Assembly: GCF_947568905.1 (NCBI RefSeq)
Contig: NC_079164.1
Location: 45,012,001 to 45,076,000, forward strand
DNA from: Ostrea edulis
Taxonomy: Eukaryota
Length of the DNA stretch: 64,000 nucleotides
Direction of reading: 5' to 3'
Below, piece by piece: positions 6,001 to 15,000 of this stretch. The notes under the pieces are model-generated. The model was not told the origin of the DNA and made no database searches. It saw only the letters and a list, made by a program, of their open reading frames with translations. A program made the position numbers and the translations under genes. The first letter of the stretch is position 1. Every line of letters begins with the position of its first letter.

Positions 6001-9000
6001 TCGAAATGCACCCGTGACAGTAGGCCTAGTTGTCAATGATACATAATCGTATCATAATTTAGGTCTATCTAACTTCTCCAAAAATAAATTTAATAATAAT
6101 TGCACTGTTTATTTTAGAAAAGCAACAACGCTAATTACAGTTGTTTACAGAAATGGCATTACTAAATTGTGTTTAGACAGTGATCCCATGTAAACGTTAT
6201 TTACTCGCAAATGCAGATTTCATACTCGCTTTCCTCGCTACATTTGGGTCGCTATTTGTATGCACTGGTGGCTAAAAGATATAAGACTGGGGAAATTTGT
6301 CAACATCGAAATAAATGTTATCCATGGTAAATAAATTAGGCCCCTAAAACCCAAGTTTTTAAAAATATCTAACACTACTTTTACAACAAGTTGATCGACG
6401 AAGGTCGCATATGACGTCACTGTACCACGTGACTACCTATCTAATTAACTAGGCTTTTTGAAATCGGGGCTTAGATTTAAGTCCGTATTGTGGCTAATTA
6501 TCGCAATACTTCAGCGAACGAACTATTACAATTAATTTCTATAAGCATAAGGAAGACAAAATGCATATAATTCTGCATACTTTGAAAACACGGGATGTGT
6601 CCTTTAATAGGGCATTATTTTTCTTAGGTTTTGACTCCATACTTCAGGCCCCAGGGATACATTGACCATGAAATTCAGTTTTAGTTCCCCTTACTCCAAA
6701 GATATTCGATACCATAGTTGATGAAAATGTCCAGTGGCATGTACTTGCAGAGTTCTTTATGTTCAAATGTTAATGCATGATGAATGTCGACAAACACCTA
6801 CCGGATGATTAAAAAAGCGGGACAAACAAAAGAACATACACACAAACAAATATAAACCAAAATATATTTTTTCCTTCAGAGTGTGAGTAAAATTATCTCA
6901 TTCTTTCAATTCTAAAGCAAACAATATATGGTAAAACATTTTACATGTCAAATTCAAGACCTGGTAGTTTTTTCTCCCTACCTGCTTTATCTCCCTGTAT
7001 TATGTTGACTGGAGAGGCTGTAATGTTGGACGTACTGCCCACACCATTCTCTGACCTCAGTGACACGTAATACACTGGCCTATTCAGAGCCTGGTCAGTC
7101 AGGGACAGGGTCAGACCATCTATGTAATAGCTGTTTACAAGGCCAACTGATTTCCAATTAAGAACATCAGTTCCTCCTACAAAACAAATTCTGCTCCATT
7201 AACACGAAGATCGAGACAACTGTGTATCCTTATCGTGAGTAACATTTATTTTAAGGATGTGTATATCTTATTACCAGTATTTACAAAATTGGAAACCAGC
7301 TAAAATGAAATAGAAAAGGGTCAGAATATGACCTGGAGTGGTTCCTACTGCCAGATGATAACTAACTAGTCCTGACTGATGGTCATCCACATCCCAGGCT
7401 GTCATAATTCCCTGTCTGTCGGATTGATACACATAGCCATTGACCAATTCCTCTGCAATTTCTGCCATCACCCCAACTCTCAACCAATGGATCTTCAATC
7501 ATACACATAGTTTAAAACAATTCCACTGTTCCAGCTTGTAGATCACTTTCAGATTTTGAAAAACCACTGACTGCAGTATTAACATTATTTTTCCTGATCT
7601 AAACTGAATATGAATTTTGTAGTGCTTTACAGCTAGGGAATCATCAACTCTGGACAACTTACAATAGGTGGTGTAGTATCAATGATAACTCCGTTGGTCT
7701 CAAAAGAGGACATGTATCCTGCCTTGTTGACTGCTGCCACCCTCATACTGTACAGAGCTCCCTGTCTAAGAGAGAGTCCTGTCCAGCTGTAGCTGGTCAA
7801 GAGACTGTTTACTATAGTGTTCCATGTAAAAGTAGCTAAAAAACAAAATTTTGACAAACGTAATATAGATTATTGAGATGGATATGAGATAATCTCATTT
7901 AATTGAGTGAATAGCATTATACAATAGGACTTAACTTGGTACAAGCTAACTTATTTTAAGAAAGTCAGCATCAGGAGGAGTTAACTAGTATTGCAACTTC
8001 CTCTTCCTTTTTGCACCCCACTCAAGTGGAAGGAACAACAGCACGTTAAGCACTTTTTCACAATCAAGGCCAATCCATGCCTCCAAAGAGAAAAAGAGAT
8101 GGGGGAATGGTTTCTCCAGCCCGGGGCAGAGGACAAAAAAAGTCTCGCCACAACACTAGGCAGCAAAAGCCTGGAACTAAAGTGAGAGATAACCAACCCC
8201 CCTTCCAGCACCAGGAATCTTCAGAGAGCGTGCCAGGGAGTGAGGCTGCACCAGATTTGGGGGAGTTTGTGCCTGCCAACTTTGGCAATATTGGTAACTC
8301 TGATTTTTCTTTAGATTTAAATGTTGCTGACTTCACCCCTGTACCAGAACTTAGCTACTTTGATAATGTAGGTCAACACATCCCTTTGAAACTGAAGCAA
8401 AAAATTTGGGATGGGCAATTTGTTGATTTAGGTTTGCTGTTAAAATCAGCAAAAGAGATTGACTATAGTTTGGGGGGTCAAGGCGAAATTAAAATCAGGG
8501 ATGGAAAATTCTGCGTTGTCAGGTCTAATGATAGTTCATACCTGACAATTGATAAATGGACTAATGCCTTCATGATTTACATGAGCGTTATGTTGGAAAA
8601 ATACAGAGCTCGGGCCCAGGAGTTTTTAAAATACATGCGAGATATCAGATTAGCTGCCACTAGATCCCAAGGCTGGTACAAATACGACGAGCAATACCGT
8701 CTCCGCAAAGCTAGCAATCCTGAATCCTCCTGGGGCATTATCAGTCAGGAATTTTGGCTACTATATGTGACCGGCCAGAGTTCATTCCATAGTCAAACTC
8801 AATTCAGTAATAATAAGCAATTTTCAAGTCAGAGCAGCACATCTGCTGTTACCCAATACTGCTATCATTTCAATCAGGGTAAAAAGTGTAATTTCTTCCC
8901 AAAATGCAGGTTCAAGCACACCTGTAGGAGATGCGGAGGAAAACATCCAGCCAACAACTGTTCTTCCAACTCAGCTGTATAAATTGGGCAAGACCCCTAT

Positions 9001-12000: not shown

Positions 12001-15000
12001 GAAATCAAGCTTACTTAAATAACATACAGGGTGGTTTGGAATTTATTTTGGGGGGAAAGGGCAAAATCTTCCCTACGCAATAGTTTGCAGAATCTTGTCA
12101 CTTGTGGTTGGTTCCTATAACCTGTCATTCATTTAGGAGATAGATACTCTCTAGAGCAATTGGTGGGGAACATCATATCGATGTTTGTGGCGGGGTCAAG
12201 GGAGACATCATCCCTGTACAAGCTTAACCTGTTGTCTCTGCCCATCTGCATCAAAGCATGAGGGATGTCTCATGGCTGTGTGTTAACATGGAAGTTAAAT
12301 GCCATTGAGCAAATGTGTGGAATAACTGGAAACTGCTTGGGGTCTGCAGCATTTCAGTGCTCAGACCCCCTCTACCTCTATAAAAGGAGGAGAGGCTACA
12401 GGCTGGGTGGTGTGAAAGTTCTAAACCAGGTAGCAAGCCAGAGACAGGGTGTAAAAGCTGTGCAGCTTGTGTGCCTAGCCACCATGCGTGTTAGGCATGG
12501 GGTTCCTTGGCACTCGCATCAAAGCGAGGCCACTAGTTTGCCCATTGGTTTATGGTATCCTAGTTGTCTCCCTTGACTCCTACTAATTTTTGCGGCCAGT
12601 ATCATCCAACACTGGTGTATTGTGTTTTTATGATGTCATTGCTCAATAAATTCATGTAAAGTACCAATTGGTGTTTATTTTTCATTCTCACTAGTGGCTG
12701 AAAGATAATTCAATAATATTGTGAAAAGGCAGACAAAGCAAACTATCTTGGCTGCAATCTTCAATTAATATAGATTATTGAGATGGATATGAGATAATCT
12801 CATTTAATTGAGTGAATAGCATTATACAATAGGACTTAACTTGGTACAAGCTAACTTATTTTAAGAAAGTCAGCATCAGGAGGAGTTAACTAGTATTGCA
12901 ACTTCCTCTTCCTTTTTGCACCCCACTCAAGTGGAAGGAACAACAGCACGTTACCCACCCACCCTCCCCATATTTTGAAAAAGTTAAGTAAACCATCAAT
13001 TTGTTTTACTTTGGTCAAATAATCTGCGCCAAGTATGTTATATTTTTAGGTAAATCGCAGGGCGTGGATTCAGTTAAGCTGAGCCTGTTTTTGTACTTGC
13101 ATAGGACTGCTCATATGACGATAGTTGCACCTTGCTAATTGCCAACCAGTCAACGAAAGAGGACTATTGAATAAATATCCAGATAATTTTTCTTTTCTTA
13201 CATTTGTCGCAATTTTAAGGGGGAGGAGTCAGGGAAACATTAAGGCCAATAAGTGTACAAGCTTAACCTGTTGTCTCTGCCCATCTGCATCAAAGCATGA
13301 GGGATGTCTCATGGCTGTGTGTTAACATGGAAGTTAAATGCCATTGAGCAAATGTGTGGAATAACTGGAAACTGCTTGGGGTCTGCAGCATTTCAGTGCT
13401 CAGACCCCCTCTACCTCTATAAAAGGAGGAGAGGCTACAGGCTGGGTGGTGTGAAAGTTCTAAACCAGGTAGCAAGCCAGAGACAGGGTGTAAAAGCTGT
13501 GCAGCTTGTGTGCCTAGCCACCATGCGTGTTAGGCATGGGGTTCCTTGGCACTCGCATCAAAGCGAGGCCACTAGTTTGCCCATTGGTTTATGGTATCCT
13601 AGTTGTCTCCCTTGACTCCTACTAATTTTTGCGGCCAGTATCATCCAACACTGGTGTATTGTGTTTTTATGATGTCATTGCTCAATAAATTCATGTAAAG
13701 TACCAATTGGTGTTTATTTTTCATTCTCACTAGTGGCTGAAAGATAATTCAATAATATTGTGAAAAGGCAGACAAAGCAAACTATCTTGGCTGCAATCTT
13801 CAATTAATACTATTTGGTAATTATTCATTTGCTGCTCTAGAATGACAAAGTATTTTTTTCAAGTTACCTGGGTAGACCTTCATCCTTGTACCATGGTATA
13901 ACTCGTAGATCTGTATTTGGAACTGCTTGATGCCAGACTCATTATCTTGGAAAGCAAAACTGGCATGAAGCTGATCAGTCTCATCCTATAAAAAAAGAAG
14001 CAAGAATAACATAAGGATTCTGTAAACAAGAGATACATTGTATTACTGGTCTGAGCAGTAAATTACTTCAGTATCATTCAACAAGTATGTAATAACTCTT
14101 TTTCGAAGGTAAAATCAATGCGACTGAGTTAGACCTTGGTGACAAAGTATGTGAAAATACTGTACATATACGTCCTGGGGAGAGTCCTTATAAAATCAGA
14201 CTTTCACTATTGCGATCCTTCTTTTCAAGCCCGAGTTCTACATTTAACAGACAGGGCTTCATGATTCTAGTACACATGGCTTATTGTCAATCATAATTAT
14301 GCAACATTGATTATCTGCTACACATCAAAAAGGGACAAAAGTTCAATTCAACCTGAGGTCAAAACTAAATACTTGACTGATATGTTGGAAAGAAAACTTA
14401 CTGCTCATTAAAAATTACAAGTGGTCCTAAAAACAATACCTCAGCAGTAACAAATTCCTAAACATTCAGCTATTGTGCAGTATACCTGGTACATAATGTC
14501 TGAGCTCCCAAGTCCATCCCACAGGTATGTTAGCTCTGGGGGAGTGAGATCTACCACAAATCCATCTGTTTCCTCAGTTACAGAGTTCAGAGCCCCATTG
14601 GTGACTTTCAGCTCCATCTTTACACGATCTTCATGTTCCAAGTTGAAGTTCAGCCATGTAACACTGGAGGAAGTGTTACTGAATGTGGACCAATCTCTCA
14701 GCAAGTCGTAGCTTGTTCCCAGATTTCTGAAATTTTTAGTACATGTCAGATTGTTAGTTGCACATTATTTGCATTCTGATATTTAAAAGCATTTTCAATT
14801 GAATTTCTAGGAATAAAACAACAATACTATTAATAGTAAATAATTTGATAAGACGGTGAATCAAACTACAGTGTGGTCTTGTAATTCAGATACCAACAAC
14901 CCAGATGCTTCACCTGGACAATTTTTTAGTGGGAACCAGTTTTATTTGGAATTTTGCATCATTATCCCATAAAATTCACTTCCAGAATCTTTATGGCAAA

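What the first reader, a model, noticed from the sequence alone, without database searches (positions are those of the whole stretch)
7856..13815. TAATA crossover core at both ends and an internal attP-like B1/A2 junction
Seen: left end aaacg|TAATA|tagat, right end tcaat|TAATA|ctatt, internal junction tcaat|TAATA|tagat. Removing the element and keeping one TAATA restores an 88-bp intron. The internal junction also has short inverted arms (AATCT..AGATT). Inference: the YR recombined the circle junction with a host TAATA, so the integrated element keeps a complete attP-like site. That site could recombine with the left end to excise a 4,905-bp A1-ORFs-B1 circle and leave A2-spacer-B2 behind. This is a compact, testable site-specific recombination system.
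Basis: partly seen in the sequence, partly recalled or inferred. Interest (0 to 1): 0.7.

Follow-up and report, generated by a model that had tools for sequence, protein, structure and literature searches.

The report
Oyster Ngaro retrotransposon with TAATA core
The region is a young, intact Ngaro-type retrotransposon that uses a tyrosine recombinase, sitting in an intron of a flat-oyster gene; the repeated TAATA is the short sequence where the element and its target crossed over, which is the known way this family inserts.

Summary
Window 7861-13809 is a 5,949-bp element with split direct repeats. A1 and A2 are 188 bp and 100% identical; B1 and B2 are 556 bp and 100% identical. TAATA lies at the left end, at the right end and as the 5-bp overlap of B1 and A2. 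Removing the element leaves an 88-bp GT-AG intron.

The element is a Ngaro-like retrotransposon (DIRS order) of Ostrea edulis. It carries gag-like, RT/RNase H, tyrosine recombinase (YR) and SGNH-hydrolase ORFs.

Eight other O. edulis copies, all at least 99.5% identical, and three Saccostrea relatives support a crossover rather than a target-site duplication:
- Flanking cores are TAATA-like but not always TAATA (CAATA, TAATG, TAAAG, TAAAT).
- Mismatches always lie on the host-proximal side.
- Two copies in satellite arrays have paralogous empty units with a single core.
- Inferred targets read YAAWD, and the central AA is invariant.

The internal B1|A2 junction is not a by-product of integration; it is the family-defining internal repeat junction. 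The AATCT/AGATT arms are at chance level.

The predicted solo A-spacer-B relic was not seen. Copies with 0 or 2 copies of the 1,039-bp A-spacer-B module do exist.

The kind and the model are known; this is a new, well-resolved member.

The parts
7861..7865 (+). Left copy of the TAATA core, at the host/A1 boundary
   Evidence: CAATA at this position in L004, L008 and L011
7861..8048 (+). A1 split direct repeat (188 bp including the core)
   Evidence: 100% identical to 12766-12953; its first ~45 nt are nearly invariant in the Saccostrea relatives
8077..8982 (+). ORF1, gag-like (301 aa, basic N-terminus, C-terminal Cys/His cluster). NCBI models place a splice donor after 8293.
   Evidence: no Pfam hit
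8910..10561 (+). ORF2, reverse transcriptase plus an RNase H-like C-terminus. The frame is open from the modelled acceptor AG at 8908-8909. The ORF listing start is 8984.
   Evidence: RVT_1 E=1.9e-15; weak RVT_3 hit E=0.006; YLDD motif in the translation; P0197 model
10465..11424 (+). ORF3, tyrosine recombinase. Overlaps the end of ORF2. Modelled acceptor AG at 10482-10483.
   Evidence: Phage_integrase E=3e-14 and SAM-like N domain. Aligns to Cre across stretches that hold Arg, His-x-x-Arg, Trp and Tyr in both proteins; their reading as the catalytic residues is from my own knowledge of Cre.
11457..12083 (+). ORF4, SGNH/GDSL-type hydrolase. No ATG at its start.
   Evidence: Lipase_GDSL_2 E=3.9e-5, below the Pfam cut-off; GSS, GSND and DGTH blocks in the translation; 86% identical in S. 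echinata and 42% in Mercenaria
12215..12770 (+). B1 split direct repeat (556 bp including the core). Carries TATAAAAG at 12379-12386 and AATAAA at 12645-12650.
   Evidence: 100% identical to 13254-13809; motifs read
12766..12770 (+). Internal B1|A2 junction core TAATA, the 5-bp overlap of the two repeats
   Evidence: TAATA at every internal junction of L001, L003, L004 (both), L005, L006 and L008
12766..12953 (+). A2 repeat
12954..13253 (+). Unique 300-bp spacer between A2 and B2
13254..13809 (+). B2 repeat, ending in the right copy of the core (13805-13809)
7836..13867 (-). Host intron that holds the element. It would be 88 bp without it. The flanking exons belong to a giant gene model.
   Evidence: GT/AG boundaries and in-frame exons; 13,903-aa minus-strand gene model over L002; weak fn3 hits on the downstream exon

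Best explanation
Window 7861-13809 is a recently inserted, apparently intact Ngaro-like tyrosine-recombinase retrotransposon (DIRS order) of the flat oyster Ostrea edulis. It lies in sense-opposite orientation in an intron of a giant gene with FN3-like repeats.

Shown:
- The A1-[gag, RT/RH, YR, SGNH]-B1A2-spacer-B2 layout.
- The 5-bp overlap of B1 and A2.
- The same or a similar pentamer at both outer ends in every copy.
- A single core in paralogous empty sites.
- Mismatches confined to the host-proximal side of each flanking core.

Inferred, following the published models for DIRS-order elements:
- The RNA lacks the outermost parts of A1 and B2. An AATAAA signal lies 120 nt before the end of B.
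- Reverse transcription restores the missing ends from the internal B1|A2 junction and joins B to A into a circle junction. This step is by analogy with the DIRS-1 internal complementary region.
- The element's Cre-like recombinase then exchanges strands between the junction core TAATA and a host YAAWD site. This leaves one hybrid core on each side and no duplication.
- The left core always keeps the element's last two bases, and the right core always keeps the element's first base. The exchange is therefore placed at or next to the central AA.

On this reading the internal junction is a replication template that is part of the element. It is not a scar of integration.
For: - Repeats and overlap.
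- Domains.
- Organism and other copies. Eight further O. edulis copies are 99.5-99.97% identical.
- Flanking cores, left/right: TAATA/TAATG (L001, L003), TAATA/TAATA (window, L007), CAATA/TAAAG (L004, L011), TAATA/TAAAT (L006), CAATA/TAATA (L008).
- Paralogous empty sites: 88 satellite units in L008 read ...CAATAACTAAAAC with one core. In L001, 11 units read ...TCATA TAATG TAATTAC.
- Statistics: 29 of 40 inferred target positions match TAATA (binomial 3e-7); AA is present in 8 of 8.
- B1 equals B2 within copies although copies differ from one another.
- Terminal sequences are conserved in Saccostrea.
Against: - No true empty allele of the window locus was available.
- No circle, RNA end or recombinase activity was observed; all steps after transcription are inferred.
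- A double-stranded circle would carry two identical B|A junctions and should also give permuted copies. None of 7 is permuted.
- Work on DIRS-1 found mainly linear single-stranded cDNA (PMC7192593).
- A 2-3-bp exchange region is much shorter than the 6-8-bp overlap of Cre-type or lambda-type recombinases (own knowledge).
- The primary Ngaro paper (Goodwin and Poulter 2004) could not be read.
Confidence: 0.85

Rival explanations
1. The internal B1|A2 junction is a working attP-like site, and the recombinase can pair it with an outer end at the DNA level. That would excise a 4,905-bp A-ORFs-B circle or a 1,039-bp A-spacer-B circle, which could then reinsert.
For: - The three sites share the core plus 188 bp or 556 bp of identity.
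- Copies with no A-spacer-B module exist: L007, L011, and Saccostrea L009, L010, L012. One copy (L004) has two modules.
- Solo AB repeats are reported for Cafeteria Ngaros (PMC8547959).
Against: - Homologous exchange between the 556-bp B copies, or RT template switching between them, gives exactly the same sequences.
- No solo A-spacer-B was seen in about 330 kb of O. edulis sequence (window plus loci), although the sampling could not target solos.
- The internal junction was never used for integration in 7 copies, despite being identical in sequence to the presumed circle junction.
Confidence: 0.2
2. TAATA is an ordinary 5-bp target-site duplication made by a staggered cut, as with LTR-retrotransposon integrases.
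For: In the window copy and in L007 the two flanking pentamers are identical.
Against: - The pentamers differ in 6 of 8 two-ended copies.
- The same pentamer sits at the internal junction of every copy.
- The L008 empty units have CAATA, while the right flank of the insertion has TAATA.
- No DDE integrase is encoded.
Confidence: 0.02
3. The shared core reflects microhomology-guided joining of a linear cDNA to a broken or nicked target by host repair, and not a recombinase-catalysed exchange.
For: - Only 2-5 nt of identity are needed, and there is no similarity of the target flanks to the element arms.
- Linear single-stranded cDNA is the main DIRS-1 intermediate (PMC7192593).
Against: - The junctions are exact in all copies, with no lost or added bases.
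- AA is invariant and the left flank is A-rich, which points to site choice.
- The YR ORF is intact and keeps Arg, His-x-x-Arg, Trp and Tyr in the stretches that align to Cre.
Confidence: 0.08

Closest known systems
Ngaro-like retrotransposons with an SGNH-hydrolase ORF (for example Xenopus DIRS-53_XT; Goodwin and Poulter 2004 as cited in PMC9210276)
   Same: - Four ORFs in the same order (gag-like, RT/RH, YR, SGNH).
- No methyltransferase domain.
- A1 at the 5' end and B1, A2, B2 at the 3' end, with 100% identical repeat pairs.
   Different: - The repeat sizes differ: 188 and 556 bp here against 236 and 152 bp.
- A 300-bp unique spacer separates A2 from B2.
- The ORFs are joined by splicing in the NCBI models, whereas the Xenopus description has every reading frame overlapping its neighbour.
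- Amphibian recombinases are only about 30-34% identical.
DIRS1-like elements and their circle-junction model (PMC3266345, PMC7192593)
   Same: A short sequence at the internal junction also flanks the element, and integration is thought to be recombination with an identical genomic sequence without duplication.
   Different: - DIRS1 has inverted terminal repeats plus an internal complementary region and a methyltransferase domain.
- Its core is 3 bp.
- Here the repeats are direct, the overlap is 5 bp, and only the central AA is obligatory.
Cafeteria burkhardae Ngaro elements (PMC8547959)
   Same: The A1-[ORFs]-B1A2B2 layout, and derivative forms attributed to recombination between the repeats (solo AB).
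   Different: The derivatives seen here are A-ORFs-B and a two-module copy. No solo AB was sampled, and the sequences are unrelated.
Cre/loxP and lambda Int/attP (own knowledge; Cre is the nearest solved structure)
   Same: The same catalytic fold, with Arg, His-x-x-Arg, Trp and Tyr in the stretches that align to Cre, and conservative exchange at a short shared core.
   Different: - No significant inverted binding arms flank the core.
- Heterology next to the core is tolerated.
- The substrate is reverse-transcribed DNA.
Crypton DNA transposons (PMC13465315, PMC3212892)
   Same: A eukaryotic YR element whose short flanking direct repeats reflect microhomology with the target and not a duplication.
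   Different: Cryptons have no reverse transcriptase and no split direct repeats.

Membership tests
Ngaro-like (order DIRS) | Encodes a tyrosine recombinase instead of a DDE integrase | tested here: met
   PF00589 E=3e-14 and PF02899. The stretches that align to Cre hold Arg, His-x-x-Arg, Trp and Tyr in both proteins. No integrase domain in any ORF.
Ngaro-like (order DIRS) | Reverse transcriptase with an RNase H domain | tested here: met
   RVT_1 E=1.9e-15. The RNase H part has only a weak RVT_3 hit, E=0.006, below the cut-off. A homologue carries PF13456.
Ngaro-like (order DIRS) | Split direct repeats in the order A1-[ORFs]-B1-A2-B2, with A1=A2 and B1=B2 | tested here: met
   The same layout is found in 6 further O. 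edulis copies.
Ngaro-like (order DIRS) | No methyltransferase domain after RT/RH | tested here: met
   Only RVT_1 and RVT_3 are found in the 525-aa ORF2.
Ngaro-like (order DIRS) | Optional fourth ORF with an SGNH hydrolase (animal Ngaros) | tested here: inconclusive
   GDSL families at E=4e-5 and 2e-4, both below the Pfam cut-offs. SGNH-type blocks are visible in the translation. The ORF is conserved in other bivalves.
Ngaro-like (order DIRS) | RT/RH groups with reference Ngaro sequences in a tree | not tested
Only indirect support: homologues in bivalves and frogs.
DIRS1-like | Inverted terminal repeats plus an internal complementary region; methyltransferase domain | tested here: not met
   The repeats are direct. 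No long inverted repeats join the ends, and there is no methyltransferase domain.
LTR retrotransposon (Gypsy, Copia, BEL) | Identical LTRs at both ends, a DDE integrase and a 4-6-bp target-site duplication | tested here: not met
   The two ends are different repeats (A and B). No integrase is encoded. The flanking pentamers differ in 6 of 8 copies.
Site-specific YR system of the Cre/lambda type | Inverted recombinase-binding arms around a 6-8-bp overlap that must match | tested here: not met
   The best symmetry is 8/12, which 28% of host TAATA sites reach. Targets differ from the core at up to 3 of 5 positions.

The most novel reading that the evidence does not exclude
The internal B|TAATA|A junction may be an active recombinase site, which would make the 1,039-bp A-spacer-B module a separable cassette. 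The copies with 0, 1 or 2 modules would then be products of recombinase-mediated resolution and re-integration. The complete absence of permuted copies would mean that the integrating junction is told apart from its sequence-identical internal twin by something other than sequence, for example an unfinished nick or flap in the cDNA. The exchange itself would need only a 2-bp AA overlap.
Probability: 0.2. Interest if true: 0.55.

Novelty: new member of a known kind. Interest (0 to 1): 0.3.

Why it matters
How tyrosine-recombinase retrotransposons integrate is known only from sequence inference, plus one experimental system (Dictyostelium DIRS-1). This oyster family is young, multi-copy and intact. 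It gives an unusually clean view of the integration step: a 5-bp junction overlap, a degenerate YAAWD target and an exchange pinned to the central AA.

It also poses two concrete puzzles. No copy is permuted, and the number of A-spacer-B modules varies between copies. The family would suit circle PCR, long-read RNA mapping and in vitro recombination.

For genome annotation the result is ordinary: a Ngaro insertion in an intron of an oyster gene.

Tried and rejected
- **Target-site duplication.** Rejected because the flank pentamers are unequal and the satellite empty units carry a single core.
- **Inverted arms or lox-like symmetry at the junction.** At chance level, and not conserved in Saccostrea.
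- **Similarity of target flanks to the element arms beyond the core.** None: about 4-5 matches in 15, as expected. The only signal is an A-rich run at -3 to -1.
- **Paralogous empty site for the window copy.** No hit in the window or the loci. The window does contain a 17.7-kb duplication, but it does not cover the insertion site.
- **Metagenome scan with the 19-nt B end.** It gave 19 hits, none with any similarity beyond the seed, so all are chance matches.
- **Crassostrea virginica relative P0007.** Not on record.
- **Mercenaria relative L013.** No split direct repeats could be found; the locus runs to the end of its contig.
- **Goodwin and Poulter 2004.** Not held in the library, so the original Ngaro replication model is cited second-hand.
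- **Other copies of the element in the window.** None.
- **Host gene.** The spliced product was not assembled or searched. Exons were scanned one at a time by reference.
- **N run at 4414-4613.** Left untouched.
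Full report
**What is in the sequence.** They are the boundaries of two pairs of perfect direct repeats. A1 7861-8048 equals A2 12766-12953 (188 bp, offset 4,905). B1 12215-12770 equals B2 13254-13809 (556 bp, offset 1,039). B1 and A2 overlap by the five bases TAATA. A unique 300-bp spacer (12954-13253) separates A2 from B2. The element is 5,949 bp with both outer cores and 5,944 bp with one.

**Coding content.** Between A1 and B1 lie four ORFs on the + strand.
- ORF1 (8077-8982, 301 aa) has a basic N-terminus and a C-terminal Cys/His cluster. 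It has no Pfam hit, and its position suggests gag.
- ORF2 (frame open to 10561) has RVT_1 at E=1.9e-15, a YLDD motif and a weak RNase H-like RVT_3 hit.
- ORF3 (10465-11424) has Phage_integrase at E=3e-14 and the SAM-like N domain. Its nearest solved relative is Cre. The two aligned stretches hold Arg in one, and His-x-x-Arg, Trp and Tyr in the other, in both proteins; from my own knowledge of Cre these are its catalytic residues.
- ORF4 (11457-12083) has no ATG. It shows SGNH-type blocks and GDSL hits just below the Pfam cut-offs.
- There is no DDE integrase and no methyltransferase.

**Organism and family.** The recombinase is 100% identical to Ostrea edulis proteins, and the window's own locus was recovered from assembly GCA_947568905.1 (L002). 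The layout A1-[gag, RT/RH, YR, SGNH]-B1A2B2 is the published definition of Ngaro-like elements of the DIRS order (PMC9210276, PMC8547959, PMC4157794, PMC6681497). More than 2,000 RT homologues with E below 1e-40 were found, many in bivalves. The O. edulis genome paper already lists Ngaro at 0.44% of the genome (PMC9679248).

**Host context.** On the minus strand the flanks are exons of a giant gene model of 13,903 aa. The exon after the insertion gives weak fn3 hits. The intron runs from GT at 13867 to AG at 7836. Without the element and one core it is 88 bp, and the exons join in frame.

**Other copies.** Eight further O. edulis copies were fetched through NCBI gene models: L001, L003-L008 and L011. 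They are 99.5-99.97% identical to the window copy. Three Saccostrea relatives (L009, L010, L012) are 81-86% identical. Every internal junction reads tcaat|TAATA|tagat. The outer cores, written left/right, are listed below.

| Copy | Left / right core |
|---|---|
| L001 | TAATA / TAATG |
| window | TAATA / TAATA |
| L003 | TAATA / TAATG |
| L004 | CAATA / TAAAG |
| L006 | TAATA / TAAAT |
| L007 | TAATA / TAATA |
| L008 | CAATA / TAATA |
| L011 | CAATA / TAAAG |
| L005 | TAATA / lost |

In O. edulis the left core always ends AATA (9 of 9). In all three species the right core always begins TAA (11 of 11). Any departure from TAATA is at position 1 of the left core or at positions 4-5 of the right core, which is the side next to the host. 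One Saccostrea copy (L010) has TAAGA on the left and is the only exception.

**Crossover, not duplication.** Two copies sit in tandem repeats, and these provide paralogous empty sites.
- In L008, 88 intact 37-bp units read ...CAATAACTAAAAC, with one core. The insertion has CAATA on the left and TAATA followed by ACTAAAAC on the right.
- In L001, 11 units read ...TCATA TAATG TAATTAC. The insertion has ...TCATA TAATA on the left and TAATG on the right. The sequence after that is not satellite, so this copy lies at an array edge or next to a rearrangement.

In both cases the host had one pentamer. After insertion each side carries a hybrid of host and element bases. A staggered-cut duplication would give two identical host pentamers and would not explain the pentamer at the internal junction.

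The inferred targets are TAATA x2, TAATG x2, CAAAG x2, CAATA and TAAAT, summarised as YAAWD. Of 40 target positions, 29 match TAATA (binomial 3e-7), and AA is present in 8 of 8. The three host bases to the left are mostly A. The target flanks otherwise show no similarity to the element arms.

**Where the exchange falls.** The left core never carries the host's positions 4-5 (5 informative copies). The right core never carries the host's position 1 (3 informative copies). If the whole pentamer were a heteroduplex overlap resolved at random, about half of these would be the other way round. The simplest reading is that both exchanges fall at or beside the central AA. This is an inference. Except for L001 and L008, the target sequences are themselves inferred from the same pattern.

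**The internal junction.** It is in fact present in the family by definition. [quoted passage not shown] For DIRS-1 the internal complementary region is the template that restores the ends and is required for retrotransposition (PMC7192593). By analogy I infer that the B1|A2 junction is the template that restores both termini. Three observations here fit that role:
- B carries AATAAA 120 nt before its end, so an RNA ending in B2 would lack the terminus.
- B1 and B2 are identical within copies (0 differences in five copies, 1 in L008), while copies differ from each other by up to 5.
- About 24 nt at the end of B and about 45 nt at the start of A are nearly invariant between oyster genera.

The short arms AATCT/AGATT are real but ordinary. 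Of the host TAATA sites, 15% do as well, and no lox-like symmetry stands out. The left arm is changed in Saccostrea without compensation.

**The predicted excision.** No solo A-spacer-B was seen, but the copies were found through their ORFs, so solos could not have been sampled. What is seen is variation in the 1,039-bp A-spacer-B module. It is absent in L007, L011 and all three Saccostrea copies, single in the canonical copies, and double in L004. These are the products expected from exchange between the internal junction or B1 and the right end or B2. They are equally expected from integration of single-junction circles, from plain homologous recombination, or from RT template switching between 556-bp repeats. 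The sequences cannot tell these mechanisms apart. L005 is cut 4 nt before the A2/spacer boundary, at base 184 of the 188-bp repeat, probably by a later deletion.

**An unexplained point.** A double-stranded circle made from a full-length copy would hold two identical B|A junctions. Integration through the internal one would give A-spacer-B-A-ORFs-B. None of the seven copies with an internal junction has that order; the chance is about 0.008 if both junctions were used equally. Either the intermediate is not such a circle (DIRS-1 work found mostly linear single-stranded cDNA, PMC7192593), or the newly formed junction is marked in some way other than by sequence.

**Comparison and verdict.** The element meets the tested defining features of Ngaro-like elements. 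The SGNH row is inconclusive by Pfam thresholds, and the phylogenetic row is untested. It does not meet the definitions of DIRS1-like elements, LTR retrotransposons or Cre/lambda-type sites. The idea that a short junction sequence recombines with a like sequence in the genome without duplication is published for DIRS1-like elements with a 3-bp core (PMC3266345, PMC7192593). The finding is therefore a correct rediscovery of a known architecture and model in a new, very clean oyster family. The details that I did not find in the papers I could read are the 5-bp overlap, the degenerate target with an invariant AA, the module-number variants and the missing permuted form.

**Limits.**
- No empty allele, RNA or circle data were available.
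- The sample is 9 copies plus 3 relatives.
- The original Ngaro paper was not readable.
- The metagenome scan gave only chance hits.
- The spliced host protein was not assembled or searched.
- No contig was taken for human, and the N run at 4414-4613 was left as it is.

Noticed in passing
window 8077-8293, 8908-8910, 10482-10484: NCBI gene models on this element (385-aa and 622-aa products) join the first 72 codons of ORF1, through the donor TTG|GTAACT after 8293, to an acceptor just before the RT frame (AG 8908-8909) or the YR frame (AG 10482-10483). That would give retrovirus-like subgenomic mRNAs with a shared Gag leader. A similar in-frame acceptor may exist for ORF4, which has no ATG; this was not checked against RNA data.
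   Followed up: partly
L004:9785-16778: This copy carries two tandem A-spacer-B modules (three A and three B repeats, all identical within the copy).
   Followed up: partly
L007:7336-12247; L011:9785-14698; L010:9764-14630; L012:64908-69844: These copies consist of A-ORFs-B only. They have no A2-spacer-B2 module, yet they have TAATA-like cores on both sides. Both S. echinata copies have this form.
   Followed up: partly
L008:6660-9789 and 15733-23351: The element copy sits inside an array of a 37-bp satellite that extends at least 10 kb. Its units each contain one CAATA at the position of the insertion.
   Followed up: yes
window 32086-43329 vs 49800-61030; 44279-47075 vs 61028-63837: A tandem segmental duplication of about 17.7 kb (99.1% and 97.7% identity) lies inside the region of the giant host gene. 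It could be a real recent duplication or an assembly artefact.
   Followed up: no
window 17035-17729, 39006-39333, 45151-45802, 56711-57038, 61892-62557: Several short arrays of a repeat family of about 157-166 bp are scattered through the introns.
   Followed up: no
window 12379-12386 and 13418-13425; 12645-12650 and 13684-13689: Each B repeat carries a TATAAAAG motif about 265 nt upstream of an AATAAA motif, which is LTR-like. A promoter in B1 would transcribe only A2-spacer-B2. Whether the motif is used is unknown.
   Followed up: no
L006:15733-15744; L010:14626-14637; L012:69840-69851: Three independent right flanks read TAAAT followed by TA, which hints at a preferred secondary target TAAATTA.
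   Followed up: no
window 4414-4613: A run of 200 N, either an assembly gap or masked sequence. It was left untouched.
   Followed up: no
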